64,000 nucleotides of DNA from Haliotis rufescens (taxonomy: Eukaryota), in assembly GCF_023055435.1 (NCBI RefSeq), contig NW_025963813.1, positions 16,182,001 to 16,246,000 on the forward strand, given 5' to 3'. How positions within the stretch are numbered: position 1 is the first letter of the stretch; every line of letters starts with the position of its first letter. The position numbers and the translations under genes were made by a program. Under the pieces are notes generated by a model. The model searched no databases. It was not told the DNA's origin and saw only the letters and a list, made by a program, of their open reading frames with translations. This document shows positions 2,220 to 64,000 of the stretch, piece by piece.

Positions 2220-5200
2220 ATGTTCGCTTCACTACCCGCCCTTGCCATTGTCTTCGCAGTCTACCTGCCGTCGACAGAAGCTCAGAGTAAGTCTTGCACC
2301 TCATAGCATTCATATGGGTGTTTGTTTACATGGGTATATGAACATGATTTTGTTCCCAACTCAATCCTTAATAATTCTGTTATAATCTGTGAGTGAGTGA
2401 GTGATTTGGGTTTTACGCCGTTTTTAACATTATTCCAGCTGTGCCACGGCGTGTCAGCTTAATGTGGTAGGAAAGCCCGAAGTGATGCACGTCTTAGACG
2501 TTTACCACTTCGGTGAAATCCACGAGCACGGGTATGGTGCTGACAAACCTAGAAATATAATGGGGGCGAACCGGGATTCGAACCCACAATCATAGGTTTC
2601 TGGCGTGCCCAAGGGACGCATCTCTGCACAGCGAATTGCGGTACCTTAGGCGACAGGGCCACCCGTGCCCCCTATGATCTTTGAGGAGCCTAGTGCTGAC
2701 CCTGTGAAGATCCGGTGTAGAATAGGTCTTCTGCAACACATACTTGCCGTAAAATGCGACTTACGGGATCAGGTGGTCAGGCTCGCTGACTTGGTTGATG
2801 CATGTCATCGTATCCCAATTGCGTGGATCGATGCTCGTGATGTCAAACACTGGATTGTCTGGTCCAGACTCGATTATTTACAGACGATCGTCACATAGAT
2901 GGAATATTGCAGAGTGTGGCGTTAACAACAAACAAACAAAGTTACATATGTTTGAGGGCAAAAAACATTGCATATTTTCTTGTCTATTTTGATGTTAATT
3001 TTAAAAACTGGTAGCCTCACTTGATGGAATGATCGTACGACAGACGTCTTTGTGAAAGCTTTGTCGTCAAGAACCAAAGATGCAAACTGAGTTGAGATTG
3101 CCCCTCCTGTCGTTTTCAGCCCGGTGCGACACTGCTGGCTGCCTGAATGGCGTCTGCATCCTGCCTCCAGCTGTTGCTGTCCCCACGTGCAGCTGCATCC
3201 CCGGCTTCCAGTTGACCGCTGCCGACCCAAACGTCTGCTTCGGTAAGTCACAGACTTCACCTTCCATTTAAAAAACTGACCAACAAACCCAAACGTCTGC
3301 TTCGGTAAGTCACAGACTTCACCTTCCATTTAACAACTGACCAATAACCCAAACGTCTGCTTCAGTTAGTCACAGACTTCACCTTTCCATTTAACAACTG
3401 ACCAACAAACCCAAAACGTCTGCTTCAGTTAGTCACAGACATCACCTTCCATTTAACAACTGACCAATAACCCAAACGTCTGCTTCAGTTAGTCACAGAC
3501 TTCACCTTCCATTTAACAACTGACCAACAAACCCAAACGTCTGCTTCAGTTAGTCACAGACTTCACCTTTCCATTTAACAACTGACCAACAAACCCAAAC
3601 GTCTGCTTCGGTAAGTCACAGACATCACCTTCCATTTAACAACTGACCAACAAACCCAAACGTCTGCTTCAGTTAGTCACAGACTTCACCTTTCCATTTA
3701 ACAACTGACCAACAAACCCAAAACGTCTGCTTCAGTAAGTCACAGACTCCACCTTTCCATTAAACAACTGACCAAAATATAATACAAAGGAATTACAAGT
3801 GGTTTTCAGTTATGAATTTTGTATTGTCAGAAAGTTCCACACAGTGCTTCACACAACCCGTGGTACGTATATGTTTACATGTTGTATTTGCCGACTGGAC
3901 TTATGATCGGGTGGGTACAAGCTGGGACCTGGTTGTTTGTGTGTCATCTACAATAACGGCCTGGATCGTTGACTTAAACAAGAAAAAGTCGAGATATGGT
4001 GTCGAACAACATTACTTAATTCTGTCAACTCAGAATGAATATCACGATGCAGAATATGGATATAATATCGAGGGAAATCTGAAGTCTTCAAACATTTCTG
4101 GATAACAGTTTATATTGTTCCTGATGGCATTTGATCCTTCATGCAAGCACGAGACGTCTTGAAGCAATACAGAAGTATTGATCCTTGGATCTACCAACAT
4201 CGAAGCGCCAATCAAATATTGAAAGAAAGCTGTAGACAAAACATGATTATTTTTGTACTGTTGTATCTGTGGTTCAAGTAGAACTTGCATATTTTGTTGT
4301 TGCAGATATTGACGAGTGTTACGGCAACACGTACATCTGTGGGGTGAGTTTTGACCCCTACCTCCGCACCTCTGTCCCCAGCGGGAGGTGTGTCAACACC
4401 CCGGCCGGCTCCTATTACTGTATGTGCAACCCCAACGTGGCCCTGTCATCCTTCGACAACAAGACCTGTATATGTAAGTGTCATACGTCCAACACTAGAC
4501 TGTCTCTCAGTCCCTGGACCATATTATGCTTCCTTCCACCCAGCCCTTACTAACATCTAGTCTCTGAAATGAACATATCGTACAGAAAAAAAACAGTTGT
4601 TCAATTATCTTAATAAAAATATAATAAAAGGGAGCCCAGTGACTCTCTTCATTTTCAGATAATGCAGTTATCTAGACTTGCCAAACATTACAGACCTGCA
4701 TGGGCTGTATTTGATATATATTTGTATCAAGGTCTGTAAGTAAGACAGACTGTCTCAGTCCCTGAACCATATGATGTTTCCTTCCGCTCAGCCCCTATCG
4801 GAGATAGATATTTGGCTCCAAATGAGGCAAGTCTGGATTTTCTAAAGGTTCTGAAACTCCCGTCTCAATGGGGCTCCTTTTCATTTTAAATGGAGTTGTT
4901 TGTTTCCATCAAATTTATATATTTTCAGTGAGTGAGTAAGTGAGTAAGGTTTTACGCCGCTTTTAGCAATATTCCAGCAATATCACGGCGGGGGACACCA
5001 GAAATGGGCTTCACACATTGTACCCATGTCGGGAATCGAACCCGGGTCTTCGGCGTGACGAGCGAACGCTTTAACCACTAGGCTACCCGACCGCCCCTAT
5101 ATATTTTCAGAGTCTAGGCGTTCGTCTCGTTCAACACTTGCATCGCTTTTCGTTGATGTCACTGAAAACAACATTGATCACTACATATTTGGGGTTGGGT

Positions 5201-35600: not shown

Positions 35601-38600
35601 CCCACTGTCATCACTTGCATCTACTGGCAGACACCTGCTGTCATCACTTGCATCTACTGAGGGATACCTGCTGTCATCACTTGCATCTACTGGCGGACAC
35701 TCACTGTCATGACTTGCATCTACTGGCGGACACCCACTGTCACCACTTGCATCTACTTGCGGACACCTGCTGTCATCACTTGCATCTACTGGCGGACACC
35801 CACTGTCATCACTTGCATCTACTGGCGGACACCTGCTGTCATCACTAGTATCTATTTGCGGACACCTGCTGTCACCACTTGTATCTATTTGCGGACACCT
35901 GCTGTCACCACTTGTATGAACTGGCCGACACCCACTGTCACCACTTGCATCTACTGGCGGAAACCTGCTGTCACCACTTGCATCTACTGGCGGACACCCA
36001 CTGTCATCACTTTCACCTACTGGCGGACACCTGCTGTCACCACTTGTATCAACTGGCGGACACTCACTGTCATCACTTGCACCTACTGGCGGACACCTGC
36101 TGTCACCACTTGGATCTACTGGCGGTCACCTGCTGTCATGACTTGTATCTACTGGCCGACACCTGCTGTCACCACTTGCATCTACTGGCGGACACCTGCT
36201 GTCATCACTTGCATCTACTGGGGGATACCTGCTGTCATCACTTGCAACTACTGGCGGACACCTGCTGTCATCACTTGCACCTACTCGCGGACACTCACTG
36301 TCACCACTTGCATCTACTGGCGGAAACCCACTGTCATCACTTGCATCTACTGGCGGACACCCACTGTCACCACTTGCATCTACTGGCGGACACCCACTGT
36401 CACCACTTGCATCTACTGGCGGGCACCAGCTGTCACCACTTGCATCTACTGGCGGACACCCGCTGTCATCACTTGCATCTACTGGCGGACACCCGCTGTC
36501 ATCACTTGCATCTACTGGCGGACACCCGCTGTCACCACTTGCATCTACTGGCGGACACTCACTGTCACCACTTGCATCAACTGGCGGACACCTGCTGTCA
36601 TCACTTGCATCTACTGGCGGAAACCCACTGTCGTCACTTGCATCTACTGGCGGACACCTACTGTCACCACTTGCGCCTACTGGCGGACACCTGCTGTCAT
36701 CACTTGCATCTACTGGCGGACATCTGCTGTCACCACTTGCATCTACTGGCGGACACCTGCTGTCATCACTTGCATCTACTGGGGGATACCCCCTGTCATC
36801 ACTTGCATCTACTGGCGAACACTCTGTCACCACTTGCATCTACTGGGGGATACCTGCTGTCATCACTTGCAACTACTGGCGGACACCCACTGTGACCACT
36901 TGCATCTACTGGCGGACACCTGCTGTCATCACTAGCATCTACTGGCGGACACCTGCTGTCACCACTTGCATCTACTGGCGGACATCCACTGTCACCACTT
37001 GCGCCTACTGGCGGACACCCACTGTCACCACTTGCATCTACTGGCGGACACCTGCTGTCATCACTTGCATCTACTGGGGGATACCTGCTGTCATCACTTG
37101 CAACTACTGGCGGATACCCACTGTCACCACTTGCATCAACTGGCGCACACCTGCTGTCACCACCTGCATCTACTCGCGGACACCCGCTGTCATCACTTGC
37201 ATCTACTGGCGGACACCTGCTGTTACCACTTGTATCTACTGGCGGACACTCACTGTCATCACTTGCATCTACTGGTGGACACCCACTGTCATGACTTGCT
37301 TACACTAACTGTGATCACTTGTGTGTACTGGCGGACACCCTCTGTCATCACTTATAGACACCAACTGTCATCACTTATAGACACCCACTGTCATCACTGG
37401 CGAACACCCACTGTCATCACTGGCGGACACCCACTGTATTCACTGGCGGACACCCACTGTCATCACTGGCGGACACCCACTGTATTCACTGGCGGACACC
37501 CACTGTCATCACTGGCGGACACCCACTGTATTCACTGGCGGACACCCACTGTCATCACTGGCGGACACCCACTGTCATCACTGGCGGACACCCACTGCGA
37601 TCACTGTACCGGCTTTTCCATCAGTCATACCTGTGACCTCAACAGATGTGGTTGTGGTTGCTCTTGGCATTGGTTTGGTTTTGTCTTCAAATAACGAAAT
37701 GTTATTTTATTATATTTTGAAAAGAGAAATTGTCATCAAATCAATGAAGTTAAGTGAAATGTTCCGATGTTACGACTGACTGCCTTACTCGTAAGCGAAG
37801 CTAGAAATAGTTTGTCCAACCTTCCAGACGCTCTTTCAAATCCTACCCCAACTCCCCATCCCACTCCATCCCCTCTCACACACTGTCACACATGCCTTTG
37901 ACAAGATCTATCATGGTCTAAACTCTTTTGAGCAGTTGTTGATTGGAAAATGTAATCTTACTTAATTAATTATCATGAAATGTAATTATTCAGATGCATG
38001 TATTGCTGACCTTCCCCTGGACGCTGTTGTCTTCTCCGGATGTCCACTCCGGTGGCCTCGACAGTGTTCGCCGACCCCCTTGTCATTCCCGTTGTCTTCA
38101 TGTTCCCTATTTGCTTCATCGTCTTCAATGCATCACCCACGTTATCTGCAGCAGAAACCCTCGTATACATTCCTCACTGAGTGAATGGGGACCAGGGTTC
38201 TCTCTGCAGTCGGTTATGACCCACAGCTACGTAACAGCTACATCACAGCTACATCACAGCTATATCCAAACTCAAGCACAGCTACATCGCAGCCATACCA
38301 CAGCTGTATATATCAGCCATATCACAGCTACATCACAGCTATTTCCCAGCTACATCACAGCTATATATATATATATATATCAGCTATATCACAGCTACAT
38401 AGCTACATCACAGCTCCAGCACGTTTATATCACAGCTACATCACAGCTCCATCACGTTTATATCACAGCTACATCACGTTTATATCACAGCTCCATCACG
38501 TTTATATCACAGCTACATATCAGCTACATCACGTTTATATCACAGCTACATCACAGCTACATCACGTTTATATCACAGCTACATCACAGCTCCATCACGT

Positions 38601-59842: not shown

Positions 59843-60986
59843 GTAACTTATAGAGCCACTCTGACATATTCATTCGTTTATAACATAACTGTATTGTATA
59901 TTTCATATTATTTTCATATAATTTATATACCTATTTTACCTTGTACGCCCCATGGAATCTGTTTCGGCTGATACCCGTGACTGATCATTTTCTGGCGTTG
60001 ACGTTTTGAACAACTATAATAGGTAGAGTGTAATGTCAGTGGAGTTTCTTGTCTTTGTCATTGTGTTTAATCATTGTCTACTGGTCAGATTACCCGTGAA
60101 GATAGTCATAACTCTTCACGGACTATCCGATTCTGCTATTATTTCCCTGTATAAAAAGTTTCAACCTTGAAACCAACAAGCTGATATTAAATTATTTGTA
60201 TTCTCTCTCAGCTGTTTCCTCGGCAACAATGCAGTTTACCTGGTATCGCGGTGTAGCAGTGACGCTCTTTCGCTTTTGCGTTATTGTTTTGGCTCACGCT
60301 CGTATTCTCTCTTTTATTGTCAAAAATGCATATGTTTTTTAAAATTTACTCAAGGCAGAACAATGTGCTGGGATATGTTCAATAACTTGGAGTGACGAAT
60401 GACGGTCTATACAGTGTTCTGTGTGTGACACCGGACGCTTTAAGAATCATCCTGCAACAACTGAGAGGATAAAAGAAATCCTTTTTTATTAAAAAATGCC
60501 TGCAACATGTTTTAGGACAAACATCATTTTAAACGCGTTGACGGATGGTGCAGCTCACAACATTCTAATGTTCGCTCTTGATGTCTGATACGCTTTCGTG
60601 TTGCCGAACCTAAGACATCTAATGATTTCACAAGTACACGGACAAGTCTCTATTTTTTGTAACCTTTGTTCCCGTGATTGTTCATGTGAACGCTTGACTT
60701 CCCTTTGCATGTGTTTATGACAGGTGCCACCGTTGGGGCAAGATACGCTAACCTTTTCGCGAACTCTTGGTCTGAACACTTATTGATAGTCACTTATAAA
60801 CACATGCTTATGACACAGTCAGAATCCTACCATAGACTCTGCTATAAGCAGAAGTTTCTTATGATTATGGAAATACTGTTGTCCCATTTTCAAGTCTTGA
60901 TATTGGAACAATGATGAATACCTTTTTGTTGGTAATAAATTCTTTATTTGAAATTAAAGCTGACGTTGTATTTGTTATTTTTCAGA

Positions 60987-63801
60987 ATGAATTTAGAATT
61001 TTCGGACTGGAACCCTATTATAGGTGCCGTACTGATTGGTGCCTCATTTTTGTTCATCTGGTGGATGTGTCAACGTGAACCTAAACCACGAGGTAGGTTT
61101 CATTGTCGTATATGTGTAGATTTTGATACAGATAACTGATTACGGTCTGAACACTTTATATTGATACTAGTATGGGTGTGCGTACATTCAATCAGGAAAA
61201 CATTATGTAGAGTGAGTTATTGAGTGAGTGAGTTGGGTTTAACGCCGCTTTTAACATTATTCCAGTTATGTCAGCCTAATGTGGAAGGAAAGCCCGAAGT
61301 AAAGGAGATCTCAGACGTTTACCACTTCGGTAAAACCCACGAGCACGGGTATGGTGCTGACGCCGGTGTGTGCAGATAAAGATACAATTACTTGAACAGT
61401 CGCTTGAAAAACAAGAACACTAAGTCTTTTTGACTGTCGAGAAATGAGTATTGATGTGATAGAGATATATCTTTGTTTATACATAAGGAAAATAGCAAGT
61501 TTTAAAGGCACCAAGAGCATACTACGCATAAATCAACAACTTTGCATTATGATTATGTCACCGGCAGCACCATCTGGTCTAACTATGAGAGTGACAGCCC
61601 TTAAAGGCGGTAAAACAGAGGACGCTGTGGCGATCGGAATGGCTGGAGGTACGTATCGTTATTACAATCGTATATGCAGTTAAGTCACGTCAATCCGGAC
61701 CGTATCATTCACAGTGATATCTTCCGCAGAAACGATTTTGATTCTTTTTTTATGCTAAGACGTTCCTTACAGTAATCATCAAAATGGAGGTGTCCGAATT
61801 AATGGGTCCACAATATTAATACTTTTCCTTTATCAAGTGCTGAAGGCCCAATTCCATGGCCAGATGTATGAGAAGTGAATTGTTGTGAATAAAAGCCAAT
61901 ACCCAAGCAAGCATGAAATATATACAATCTACAAATAACACTACTGGGCGAAAGGGTGGGAAAACTGCTTTTAGTGGCATCAATTCTGTGGCGAGCTTCG
62001 CCATGTCGCTTCCGCTACTGCTAGCCCTCTAGTTTCGGCGGTCAAAGGGGGATTATTTATTAAATGAACTTTATACACTGTATTATCCCTTTATTATAAG
62101 TAACAGCAAGAGACATTGCTGAAAGAAAACGCAATCAACTTTGATACGACACGAACAAGAGGATATGCATGGTAATAATTAGCAGCAAATGTTAGTGCGG
62201 ATTTTGATTGCTGAACTGAACCATCTGGTCCACCGCCTGCAACTGTTGCTGAGAGTCAACGTCAGTATATCTTCCATATGTGTCACTAGTCCAGCATCCA
62301 ATTCACACATCCGCTCCGAAAGCACGTTTTTTTTGTGTACGTTTCCTCAAACAGCTAATTATTCATGAGAAGGAATTATTGGTCTTGCACACTGCTCAAC
62401 TGCACCCAGGGCTCTTGAACAGTAATACAAATTGATGGAAAGACATCTTTGATCAACGGATAACGGATACCAGCCGCTCGTGGGAAATATATCAAGACAG
62501 TACCTTTCTTAACTAACATATCTGAGCGTGTCATTCAGACGTCACACGACATGTAGACGACACCACAAATATATCACTGACACTGTCTACACCAGCAGCG
62601 TCGCATTGAAGACTGTCGTCTAAGCCTGGGGGACACCCGCATCAACCACCAAACCCAACATACATTGGAATAACATCAAGACCCCTCAGTATCTGCATCA
62701 CAGAAAAGATAGATTGCTATGGCTAGATTACAGAACGAGCGCGGCTGATCGTTCAACTTAAGGTGAACTTACATCTACCATACGTCTATTAAACTGTCCA
62801 TTATTTCGTCGTGCTTTGATATGGTCACACACAAAAACTAACAGAAATATTTATTTATTGTCAGACGGTGGTCTGGCTGATGGAGGTAATGTTGACGTGA
62901 AAGCCAACGAAAATGGAGAGAGCAAACGTGCGCTCGCTATCGGAAGAACAACCGAAAAGGGTTTACAAACTGTCTTGCAGAATCCAACCCCGGCAGAAGA
63001 AGGTATCACTTATACATATCAGTGCAAGCGGGGTGGTGACTGACTAGATACTTAAATAAATATGTTAAGTTGGATGTTTCACTCGTCGCACGATTCCGAA
63101 ATGTAAGATACAAGATTCGTTTTGATATTGTTTCCTTGACTATTTTAAAGCATCAATTGTGTCCATGTCCAAGGAGATAACATACGACAAACTCCATGCC
63201 TTCAAATATTTTGCAGGTCCAGGGCGCTACAAGATGGAAGCGATTCCGAGAGGTAAATGCATTTATGACAACGTAATGTTGCCCTGAATCAAAATACTTG
63301 TCCTTAAGCCTAAGTGCATTTTACTAACTTCACCTTACCATGATGTGAAGAAATCAACATTCAATTTACTTGCACTCAGTGAAGGTACTCCTCCAGATAT
63401 TGGGTAATACTTTCAGCCACAATATATATCACTTCACTGGCTGGCCCATGGGCGGTATTGGCTAGGATTTAATAAAGCGGGTTTTGTAACCAATTTCCAC
63501 CAAACACATTATTCTGTGGTAATCAGTGTAATTCACAACTCCAAGGTTCTAGGTTTTATCATAGTGTGTTAGTTATTTCAAACCTCATGTCAAGTTTTAG
63601 TATGGCGTTCCCTAAATGGAAGTAGCTTAAAAACACCTTTAACACAAATTATGATACATATGACCTTGTTAGAATGTATTTTGAGACAGTCATCTACTCG
63701 TATGTATGTATTTTGTTTATTCTCAGGACTGTGCCTCATTATCAACAACATACATTTTGAGGAGGGATTTTCCCCAAGGTACTCCGCTAAAGAAACGGCA
63801 G
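60987..63801 (+). CDS. Caspase-family (peptidase C14A) protein with N-terminal transmembrane segment, 5' part; exons 60987-61092, 61568-61648, 62865-63002, 63217-63252, 63727-63801; continues beyond the window
   Basis: Phase-1 GT-AG exons give MNLEFSDWNPIIGAVLIGASFLFIWWMCQREPKPR|APSGLTMRVTALKGGKTEDAVAIGMAG|DGGLADGGNVDVKANENGESKRALAIGRTTEKGLQTVLQNPTPAEE|GPGRYKMEAIPR|GLCLIINNIHFEEGFSPRYSAKETA. YxMxxxPRGLCLIINNxxF...R is the start of the caspase p20 subunit. Catalytic His/Cys lie outside the window. The exon 2 acceptor has a weak pyrimidine tract. Confidence 0.8.
61215..61362 (-). mobile_element. Truncated SINE family B in the caspase intron after exon 60987-61092
   Basis: 3' half of the 58417-58695 element, reversed. 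Confidence 0.8.
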
Positions 63802-64000
63802 GTACTTTTTTTCATGCCCAGTCTACTGAAATGTCCACCCTTTATCGATCTCTCCCTTAACTTTAATCCCATCTTCATCCCGAGTTTGGTGCGAGGTCTT
63901 GCTGTACCATACCATTTTTGTGTGTTTTTAACAAAATATGTATACGGCAGCTACCACTGCAAGCGGTGTAAGATGACATGGCACTAATTGTGACCACAGT

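What the first reader, a model, noticed from the sequence alone, without database searches (positions are those of the whole stretch)
60987..63801. Caspase with an N-terminal transmembrane anchor instead of CARD/DED
Seen: IIGAVLIGASFLFIWWMC followed by a basic stretch (QREPKPR) precedes ~75 aa of Gly-rich repeat linker and then a clear p20 start (YKMEAIPRGLCLIINN). There is no room for a six-helix death-fold domain. The positive-inside rule suggests a signal anchor with the caspase domain cytosolic. Established: canonical caspases are soluble, with CARD/DED or short prodomains. The S1-pocket Arg appears kept (SPR), but the usual R-x-G-[ST]-x-x-D reads RYSAKETA, so specificity may be altered or this may be a pseudo-caspase.
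Basis: partly seen in the sequence, partly recalled or inferred. Interest (0 to 1): 0.8.

Follow-up and report, generated by a model that had tools for sequence, protein, structure and literature searches.

The report
Membrane-anchored caspase of abalone
Red abalone expresses a cell-death-type protease (a caspase) that carries a membrane anchor at its front end instead of the usual recruitment domain; the design is unusual but not without precedent, and its function is untested.

Summary
Confirmed. The last 3 kb of the window hold the first five coding exons of an 8-exon gene. Three more exons lie 0.4-1.7 kb past the window end. The product is the 344-aa protein that NCBI names 'caspase-3-like [Haliotis rufescens]'.

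Contigs of four public runs (three studies) show all seven coding introns spliced as modelled. They join the hydrophobic first coding exon to the caspase exons. The only upstream exon seen is a 5' UTR exon 14.8 kb upstream, with an in-frame stop.

The protein has 9 N-terminal residues, a 19-20-residue hydrophobic helix bounded by invariant Trp, a basic flank, and a 76-residue Gly-rich disordered linker with two pseudo-repeats. A complete caspase-3/7-like domain follows. The His/Cys dyad is kept (THG, EACRTG). The S1 Gln is Glu here and Asp in H. rubra and H. asinina, where the first S1 Arg is Leu.

The architecture was found in three Haliotis species only. The gene is single-copy and fast-evolving. 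Membrane topology and activity are inferred, not shown.

Transmembrane caspases are already reported in amphioxus (TNFR-caspase), so this is a new variant.

The parts
45962..46199 (+). 5' UTR exon. The end is exact; the start is only a minimum, from the 238 loose letters of a contig.
   Evidence: Loose ends before L004:386 in X2 (193 letters) and X9 (238 letters) share one 30-letter consensus. That consensus occurs once in the window, at 46170-46199, and is followed by GTAAGT. Reading the frame back from the ATG gives an in-frame TAA at 46186-46188.
60986..61092 (+). First coding exon (ATG at 60987): 9 N-terminal residues, the hydrophobic helix and a basic flank. It ends in phase 1.
   Evidence: The joint L004 490>966 (GT..AG, cut +2) equals window 61092>61568 and is seen in 4 of 4 runs.
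61014..61070 (+). Codons for residues 10-28 (PIIGAVLIGASFLFIWWMC), the predicted membrane helix.
   Evidence: KD 19-mer mean 2.02. Simple sum on the Hessa scale is -1.4 (17-mer) to +0.7 (19-mer) kcal/mol. The AF2 helix spans residues 10-29 at pLDDT about 83. W8, W25 and W26 are invariant in three species.
61568..61648 (+). Exon 2: linker pseudo-repeat 1.
   Evidence: Joints at both ends in 4 of 4 runs. Repeat alignment.
62865..63002 (+). Exon 3: linker pseudo-repeat 2 and the rest of the linker.
   Evidence: Acceptor joint in 4 of 4 runs. The donor joint to exon 4 is seen in X9; X2 and X5 bridge it with a diverged exon 4.
63217..63252 (+). Exon 4 (36 bases): GPGRYKMEAIPR, the start of the large-subunit region.
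   Evidence: Joints 2400>2615 and 2650>3125 in X9. In X2 and X5 the same 36 bases differ at 4 letters (tables 5 and 5c).
63727..63801 (+). Exon 5: first beta strand of the caspase fold and the first S1 arginine (R138).
   Evidence: The alignment to human caspase-3 puts R138 opposite the Arg of its S1 pocket. Joint 3198>3826 is seen in 4 of 4 runs.
63802..64000 (+). Start of intron 5. The gene runs on beyond the window. Exon 6 is G000:C35:16246429-16246728 (THG, EACRTG). Exon 7 is 16247136-16247301 (SYRN). Exon 8 is 16247604-16247736 (ends LYF, TAA).
   Evidence: PF00656 matches at C35:16246434-16246721 with E 5.3e-18. Joints 4126>4534 and 4699>5002 are seen in 4 of 4 runs. Exon lengths 106+81+138+36+75+300+166+133 sum to 1035 bases, or 344 codons plus stop, which equals the length of P0152.

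Best explanation
This is a real, expressed, single-copy abalone gene for a caspase-fold cysteine protease. Its prodomain is not a death fold. It is instead an N-terminal single-pass signal anchor followed by a roughly 80-residue flexible linker. Shown: the gene model, its splicing, the domain content, the conserved His/Cys dyad, and the same architecture in three Haliotis species. Inferred: the helix inserts with its short acidic N-terminus outside or in the lumen. The basic flank, linker and caspase domain would then face the cytosol, so the enzyme is tethered to a membrane whose identity is unknown. The moderate hydrophobicity and basic C-flank fit the ER/plasma-membrane route or the mitochondrial outer membrane. 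Also inferred: like effector caspases, it would be switched on by cleavage in the inter-subunit linker, at the conserved D-x-D (D255, D257). It would then act on membrane-proximal substrates, or be released by a cut in the linker at the invariant G62-D63. Because the S1 Gln is Glu/Asp and the first S1 Arg is not conserved, its P1 preference is probably no longer the canonical strict Asp.
For: Splicing: 7 of 7 coding introns appear as GT..AG joints at the modelled bases. The exon 1>2 joint is seen in 4 of 4 runs from 3 studies. X9 record 20 lies on exons 1, 3 and 6. Identity: P0152, 'caspase-3-like [Haliotis rufescens]', has 344 aa and its longest contig of 41,214,950 bases equals the length of C35. 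Domains: Pfam finds only Peptidase_C14, residues 120-343, covering 1-233 of 233 model positions, E 5.9e-41. Fold: the best solved relatives are caspase-3 and caspase-7, E 6e-30, with Foldseek TM-score 0.84-0.90 normalised to the target. Catalytic sites: H195, C238, R138 and R279 align to the caspase-3 catalytic and S1 residues. Anchor: KD 2.0-2.35 and net +2 after the core in all three species; AF2 helix at residues 10-29. Conservation: the caspase domain is 65-76% identical and the TM region 17-35%, yet the TM stays hydrophobic with W8, W25 and W26 invariant. No alternative prodomain: 0 of 122 CARD matches and 0 of 16 DED matches lie at the locus.
Against: No membrane predictor, localisation experiment or activity assay was available, so topology and catalysis are inferences. 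The hydrophobicity is only moderate, with a summed Hessa value near 0 kcal/mol (scale values recalled). Glu/Asp at Cys-2 and Leu for the first S1 Arg in two species could mean loss of caspase activity rather than a new specificity. The runs are labelled 'RNA?' by guess only; that they hold RNA rests on the spliced joints. The exon 3>4 and 4>5 joints were seen exactly in 1 of 4 runs. X2 and X5 carry a diverged exon 4, and X1 only intron-retaining contigs.
Confidence: 0.6

Rival explanations
1. It is a membrane-anchored pseudo-protease or decoy. The protein is tethered as above but no longer cleaves substrates, at least not after Asp. It would act as a scaffold or inhibitor of other caspases, as cFLIP does for caspase-8.
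For: The S1 Gln is Glu/Asp in 3 of 3 Haliotis proteins, against Q in 44 of 53 aligned relatives. The first S1 Arg is Leu in 2 of 3. The pentapeptide has an extra residue before Gly. The clade sits on a very long stem branch of 2.23 changes per column. Eight of 10 listed exonic differences between run contigs and the reference change the residue. Non-canonical pentapeptides are common in mollusc caspase expansions: 40 CASc domains (78.4%) in Mytilus coruscus (PMC10967218, passages read).
Against: His195 and Cys238 are invariant although overall identity is only 57-63%. The L3 loop around R279 (Y274-N285) is almost invariant. The caspase domain is the best-conserved part of the protein. Acidic residues at Cys-2 also occur in Littorina caspases with otherwise canonical motifs.
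Confidence: 0.2
2. The hydrophobic segment is a cleaved signal peptide, so the caspase domain is luminal or secreted.
For: The segment is N-terminal and hydrophobic. No dedicated predictor could be run here.
Against: There is no positive charge before the core (net -1 to -2 over the residues shown, before counting the free amino terminus). The core is 17-20 residues, which is long for a signal peptide by general knowledge. Bulky Trp-Trp and charged residues sit where small -3/-1 residues would be expected. The flank after the core is net +2 in 3 of 3 species.
Confidence: 0.12
3. The first exon is an annotation or assembly artefact, and the true protein starts elsewhere, either at a death-fold exon or at a downstream Met.
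For: None was found. A downstream in-frame Met (M42) exists.
Against: Spliced contigs link the 5' UTR exon, the TM exon and the caspase exons. There is an in-frame stop upstream of ATG 60987. Independent gene models in H. rubra and H. asinina have the same N-terminus type. No CARD or DED lies nearby.
Confidence: 0.03

Closest known systems
Effector caspases-3/-7 (human, zebrafish; e.g. PDB 5iar, 4jr0, 5jft)
   Same: Full caspase fold. His and Cys dyad present. Both S1 arginines are present in the H. rufescens protein. There is no death-fold prodomain and the inter-subunit linker is Asp-rich.
   Different: A transmembrane helix and an 80-residue linker replace the short soluble prodomain. The motif is EACRTG, not QACxG. 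The IETD-type site is not kept, reading IEFL at that place. Identity is about 28-31%. The tree does not place the clade securely with any named subfamily.
Amphioxus transmembrane TNFR-caspase / LRR-caspase 'shortcut' proteins (Zhang et al. 2008, PMC2575513; here P0169 and P0212)
   Same: An integral-membrane protein with an intracellular caspase domain, validated by cDNA according to the paper (passages read). P0212 has a TM at residues 79-97 with KD 2.89, upstream of a caspase-like domain.
   Different: The amphioxus proteins have a receptor ectodomain and a coiled-coil stretch. The abalone protein has only about 9 residues outside the membrane, so it is an anchor, not a receptor. In the tree the amphioxus proteins form their own 100/100 clade away from the Haliotis clade, so the membrane segment was probably gained independently. 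The paper says its proteins keep QACXG. The paper's Additional files 6 and 7 were not seen.
Expanded mollusc caspases with non-canonical active-site motifs (Mytilus coruscus, PMC10967218; bivalve survey PMC7836458)
   Same: A lineage-specific, fast-diverging caspase with changed pentapeptide and S1 residues.
   Different: In both papers the word 'transmembrane' refers only to death receptors. No membrane-anchored caspase is described in the passages found. Their supplementary tables were not seen.
Metacaspases and paracaspases (recalled, not tested here)
   Same: An acidic residue two places before the catalytic Cys, which in those enzymes helps bind a basic P1 residue (recalled knowledge).
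   Different: The abalone protein is clearly of the caspase (C14A) type by sequence and fold, and keeps at least one S1 arginine.
Prokaryotic caspase homologues with N-terminal transmembrane segments (PMC3501461; search listing only)
   Same: A caspase-family domain behind a membrane segment.
   Different: These are bacterial metacaspase-type proteins. The paper was not read beyond the listing.

Membership tests
Caspase family (Pfam Peptidase_C14 / MEROPS C14A) | Full-length match to the caspase domain profile and the caspase fold | tested here: met
   PF00656 E 5.9e-41, 1-233 of 233 positions. AF2 pLDDT >90 over residues 112-344. Foldseek TMt 0.84-0.90 to caspase-3/-7.
Caspase family (Pfam Peptidase_C14 / MEROPS C14A) | Catalytic His-Cys dyad | tested here: met
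   H195 and C238 align to the caspase-3 dyad. Both are invariant in 3 of 3 Haliotis proteins. In the wider alignment H is present in 52 of 53 rows and C in 51 of 53.
Caspase family (Pfam Peptidase_C14 / MEROPS C14A) | QACxG pentapeptide | tested here: not met
   EACRT(G) in H. rufescens, DSCRR in H. rubra, DACRT in H. asinina. No literal QACxG on either strand of the 20 kb fetched from 1 kb before the window end.
Caspase family (Pfam Peptidase_C14 / MEROPS C14A) | S1 pocket triad Arg-Gln-Arg that binds the P1 Asp | tested here: not met
   R138 and R279 are present but the Gln is E236. In H. rubra and H. asinina the first Arg is Leu and the Gln is Asp.
Caspase family (Pfam Peptidase_C14 / MEROPS C14A) | Cleavage after Asp | not testable with these tools
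   This needs enzyme assays.
Effector (caspase-3/6/7) subfamily | Groups with caspase-3/6/7 in a phylogeny | tested here: inconclusive
   The best PDB matches are caspase-3/-7, but the nearest named database proteins are mostly caspase-8/10-like. In a 31-row tree the Haliotis clade (100/100) joins the side holding caspase-3b, caspase-6 and caspase-9, with only 56/94 support.
Initiator caspases with death-fold prodomain | CARD or DED before the protease domain | tested here: not met
   No CARD or DED hit in Pfam at E<=1. The linker is predicted disordered. 0 of 122 CARD and 0 of 16 DED genome matches lie at the locus.
Single-pass signal-anchor membrane proteins (N-out, C-in) | One hydrophobic helix of about 19 or more residues near the N-terminus | tested here: met
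   KD 19-mer mean 2.02, 2.35 and 1.77 in the three species. AF2 helix at residues 10-29.
Single-pass signal-anchor membrane proteins (N-out, C-in) | More positive flank on the cytosolic (C-terminal) side | tested here: met
   The N-flank is net -1 to -2 and the C-flank net +2 in 3 of 3 species.
Single-pass signal-anchor membrane proteins (N-out, C-in) | Not cleaved by signal peptidase; integrated in a membrane | not testable with these tools
   No SignalP or DeepTMHMM was available here. It needs those predictors or an experiment.
Receptor-caspase fusions (amphioxus TNFR-caspase type) | Extracellular ligand-binding domain, TM segment and intracellular caspase domain | tested here: not met
   Only 9 residues precede the helix, and no second Pfam domain is found. 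The amphioxus proteins form a separate clade.

The most novel reading that the evidence does not exclude
The gene is one half of a two-gene membrane switch. The caspase would be anchored beside a divergently transcribed neighbour (minus strand, exons at 44076-43994 and about 37686-37590). That neighbour also starts with a TM helix and a basic flank and carries one copy of a similar beta-strand motif. The neighbour's motif would pair with or template the caspase's two pseudo-repeats, clustering the anchored caspase for proximity activation. This is the logic of RHIM or fungal amyloid signalling, but on a membrane. The remodelled S1 pocket (acidic residue at Cys-2) would give the caspase a non-Asp cleavage preference.
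Probability: 0.06. Interest if true: 0.85.

Novelty: new variant of a known kind. Interest (0 to 1): 0.55.

Why it matters
Caspases are normally positioned by death-fold adaptors. A caspase fixed to a membrane by its own anchor would be controlled by location rather than by recruitment. With Glu/Asp in place of the S1 Gln it may also cut after something other than Asp. The gene is restricted to abalone in the databases searched and evolves fast, which is typical of immune or conflict genes. Abalone suffer bacterial and viral mass mortalities, so a lineage-specific death protease is a reasonable candidate for host-defence studies. It also adds a second, apparently independent case beside amphioxus of a caspase becoming an integral membrane protein.

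Tried and rejected
1. A literal search for QACxG in the 20 kb fetched from 1 kb before the window end found nothing. The profile search then located the real exon, with EACRTG.

2. An alternative CARD/DED first exon is rejected. No family match lies at the locus, and the spliced contigs show a non-coding 5' exon.

3. Pfam on the linker exons alone and on the two neighbour exons, at E<=10, gave 0 families for 4 of 4 peptides.

4. A search of the N-terminal 115 residues against the protein database returned only the protein itself. Under the tool's word rule a blank means nothing; it even missed P0151 and P0002.

5. The paralogous-neighbour idea got mixed results. tblastn of the linker against the window gave one minus-strand hit (37676-37587, E 0.006, 33% of 30 residues). 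The neighbour's TM exon has the same layout: an acceptor one base before the ATG and a phase-1 donor. However, an HMM of the six caspase repeats built without the neighbour did not find it at E<=10 among 2533 six-frame fragments. The hits are circular, because the neighbour was in that model. The DNA of the two TM exons aligns poorly. I do not count the neighbour as part of the feature.

6. Rfam on the intron-1 repeat gave no match.

7. The tree of 31 named rows was chosen by me from the 217 stored proteins, for having a name. No human caspase was among them. The subfamily placement was unresolved.

8. Literature: seven searches (and the in-paper finds) gave no natural metazoan caspase with a bare N-terminal anchor. 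The phrases 'transmembrane caspase', 'membrane-anchored caspase' and four others matched 6 papers, judged unrelated from their titles and abstracts. The one relevant precedent is amphioxus TNFR-caspase. 'Not in print' holds only for these searches of the open-access library.

9. dN/dS between species could not be done, because no DNA of the orthologues was available (see below).
Full report
Where it is. The window is G000:C35:16182001-16246000, plus strand, in a 1.33-Gb assembly. The protein search names the organism. The 344-aa protein P0152, 'caspase-3-like [Haliotis rufescens]', sits on a contig of 41,214,950 bases, the length of C35. The gene is therefore already in RefSeq as an automatic model. 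In the papers I searched I found nothing written about its N-terminus.

Gene model. I read base by base, after a first pass. The coding exons in window coordinates are 60986-61092 (ATG at 60987), 61568-61648, 62865-63002, 63217-63252 and 63727-63801. Three more lie beyond the window end at 64429-64728, 65136-65301 and 65604-65736, which is C35:16246429-16247736 (fetched). All introns are GT-AG. Six are in phase 1 and the last is in phase 2. The exon lengths sum to 1035 bases, which is 344 codons plus TAA and equals the length of P0152. The joined protein I used is the public model returned, and its sequence agrees exon by exon with the translations.

Transcript evidence. The look-up of sequencing runs listed 23 runs, of which 20 hold part of the 5.8-kb stretch. 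All are labelled 'RNA?' by guess. I laid Logan contigs of X1, X2, X5 and X9 (three studies) on L004, which is window 60601-66400.
- Five of the seven coding introns appear as GT..AG joints at exactly the modelled bases in 4 of 4 runs: exon 1>2, 2>3, 5>6, 6>7 and 7>8.
- Introns 3 and 4 appear exactly in X9 only.
- In X2 and X5 one contig bridges exon 3 to exon 5 with 32 other letters. With the shared end letters these form a 36-base exon 4 differing at 4 letters.
- X1 shows intron-retaining contigs there.
- X9 record 20 (934 letters) lies on exons 1, 3 and 6.
- Other joints: two inside the intron-1 repeat (X1), and one AT..TT joint at 4120>4544 with 28 foreign letters (X5). I take these for assembly noise.
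The spliced joints show that these runs hold RNA of this gene.

The 5' end. Before L004:386, one base ahead of the ATG and directly after an AG, X2 and X9 contigs run on for 193 and 238 letters that are not in L004. Their 30-letter consensus occurs once in the window, at 46170-46199. A GTAAGT donor follows it. Read in the frame of ATG 60987, this exon has a TAA at 46186-46188. The exon is therefore 5' UTR and the protein cannot start further upstream in this transcript. No CARD match (0 of 122 in the genome) and no DED match (0 of 16) lies at the locus. The nearest CARD hits on C35 are more than 3 Mb away, and no DED hit is on C35 at all.

The protein.
- Domains: Pfam finds one domain, Peptidase_C14, at residues 120-343, covering the whole profile with E 5.9e-41.
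- Structure: AlphaFold2 on a 53-row alignment gives mean pLDDT 80.9. It predicts a helix at 10-29 (pLDDT about 83) and a linker at 30-110 below 50, with only two short strands (54-59, 84-89) and one short helix. The caspase domain is above 90.
- Solved relatives: Foldseek and phmmer against solved structures both put caspase-3 and caspase-7 first (E 6e-30, TM-score to target 0.84-0.90).

Active site. In the HMMER alignment to human caspase-3:
- R138 (SPR) stands opposite the first S1 arginine.
- H195 (THG) stands opposite the catalytic His.
- E236-A-C238-R-T-G stands opposite Q-A-C-R-G, with one extra residue.
- Y278-R279 stands opposite W-R of the second S1 arginine.
The dyad and both arginines are thus kept in H. 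rufescens. The Gln that helps hold the P1 Asp is Glu. That role is stated in PMC10967218 (passage read). Among 53 aligned relatives this position is Q in 44, D in 5, E in 1, L in 2 and H in 1. The acidic cases are the three Haliotis proteins, two Littorina saxatilis caspases and one unnamed ENA protein.

The anchor. Residues 10-28 have a Kyte-Doolittle mean of 2.02. The best 19-mer elsewhere in the protein scores 0.66. A plain sum on the Hessa scale (values recalled, no position weighting) gives -1.4 kcal/mol for the best 17-mer and +0.7 for the best 19-mer. The median is 13.9 for the first 60 residues of 155 relatives. The residues before the core carry net -1 to -2 and the 15 after it net +2, in all three species. 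W8, W25 and W26 are invariant, although the segment is otherwise only 17-35% identical. From general knowledge of the positive-inside rule and of aromatic belts at membrane interfaces, I read this as a reverse signal anchor with the caspase domain in the cytosol. This is an inference, because no predictor or experiment was available. The hydrophobicity is moderate, so the mitochondrial outer membrane is as possible as the secretory-pathway membranes.

The linker. It has 76 residues, 14 of them Gly. Exon 2 and exon 3 each carry one copy of a unit of about 21-27 residues. The similarity is modest: shuffles reach the observed score in 14/500, 4/500 and 2/500 trials. G62-D63 at the junction of the two units is invariant, as are D255 and D257 in the inter-subunit linker. 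These are possible processing sites, which is an inference.

Distribution and evolution. A profile-free scan of 1.84 billion representatives with exon 6 gave 4452 proteins at E<=0.001. Only two are close: a 95% identical 89-residue Logan fragment, and P0002 of H. asinina at 69%. Word-based searches with P0002 and P0152 found the same three Haliotis proteins and nothing else above 36% identity.
- The three share the whole architecture at 57-63% identity.
- In a 31-row tree they form a 100/100 clade on a stem of 2.23 changes per column. H. rufescens lies outside H. rubra plus H. asinina (98/89). Their place among caspase subfamilies is unresolved.
- In the H. rufescens genome the TM and linker exons match only this locus, and the best paralogous caspase domain is 40% identical.
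- Of 10 differences listed in exons 6-8 between run contigs and the reference, 8 change the residue. Nine further differences were not shown by the tool.
The gene is thus single-copy, genus-restricted as far as these databases go, and fast-evolving. The caspase domain is its most conserved part (65-76%).

What is known. Two mollusc caspase surveys use 'transmembrane' only for death receptors. Phrase searches for membrane-anchored caspases gave 6 papers, judged unrelated from titles and abstracts. Zhang et al. [quoted passage not shown] My own search recovered such proteins. P0169 has TNFR_c6 plus caspase. P0212 has a TM at 79-97 and a caspase-like domain with Ser for the catalytic Cys. They form a separate 100/100 clade. 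The abalone protein differs in having no ectodomain. The supplements of these papers were not seen and may list further architectures.

Neighbour. Earlier notes of this scan (s1-811076, s1-811222) pointed to a minus-strand gene upstream. I found a minus-strand exon at 44076-43994 with the same layout as the caspase's first coding exon: an acceptor one base before the ATG, a hydrophobic stretch, basic residues and a phase-1 donor. I also found an exon near 37686-37590 whose peptide resembles repeat 1 (E 0.006). The resemblance did not survive an independent HMM or a DNA alignment, and I could not lay reads on it. I leave it as an open lead.

Verdict. The thing is a new variant of a known kind: a caspase with a bare N-terminal membrane anchor and a remodelled S1 pocket, expressed and conserved in abalone. 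Localisation, topology, activity and function are untested.

Noticed in passing
window 43994-44076 (-) and about 37590-37686 (-): A possible divergently transcribed neighbour. Its first coding exon mirrors the caspase's: an acceptor one base before the ATG, a TM-like stretch, basic residues and a phase-1 donor. A later exon weakly resembles linker repeat 1 (tblastn E 0.006). The resemblance is not recovered by an HMM built without it, and the DNA alignment is poor.
   Followed up: partly
window about 61183-61376 (intron 1); second copy L002 about 4426-4623: An abundant repeat. Word depth is about 4e4 to 4e5 in all four runs, with many loose ends at its borders. It has no Rfam family. It is probably a SINE-like element carried in many transcripts.
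   Followed up: partly
L004 3998-5124 (exons 6-8) and exon 4 (window 63217-63252): High amino-acid polymorphism. Eight of 10 listed exonic differences between run contigs and the reference are non-synonymous. Exon 4 in X2 and X5 differs at 4 of 36 letters.
   Followed up: partly
L004 2263-2585 and 2644-3198: Well-covered contigs that keep intron 4, or run from exon 3 into intron 3, in X1 and X2. These are intron-retaining transcripts or pre-mRNA (table 8).
   Followed up: no
window about 36900-37600: A tandem satellite of a unit of about 22 bases directly abuts the minus-strand motif exon. Long open frames across it are repeat artefacts.
   Followed up: no
L002 about 2900-2975: A (CA)n microsatellite about 170 bases after the stop codon, probably in the 3' UTR.
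   Followed up: no
proteins P0212, P0169 (Branchiostoma floridae) and P0085 (Gigantopelta aegis): Amphioxus P0212 combines an ectodomain fragment, a strong TM segment and a caspase-like domain whose catalytic Cys is Ser. P0169 combines TNFR_c6 with a caspase domain. The gastropod Gigantopelta aegis 'caspase-3-like' model also has a hydrophobic N-terminus (KD 1.98) just before a canonical caspase domain.
   Followed up: partly
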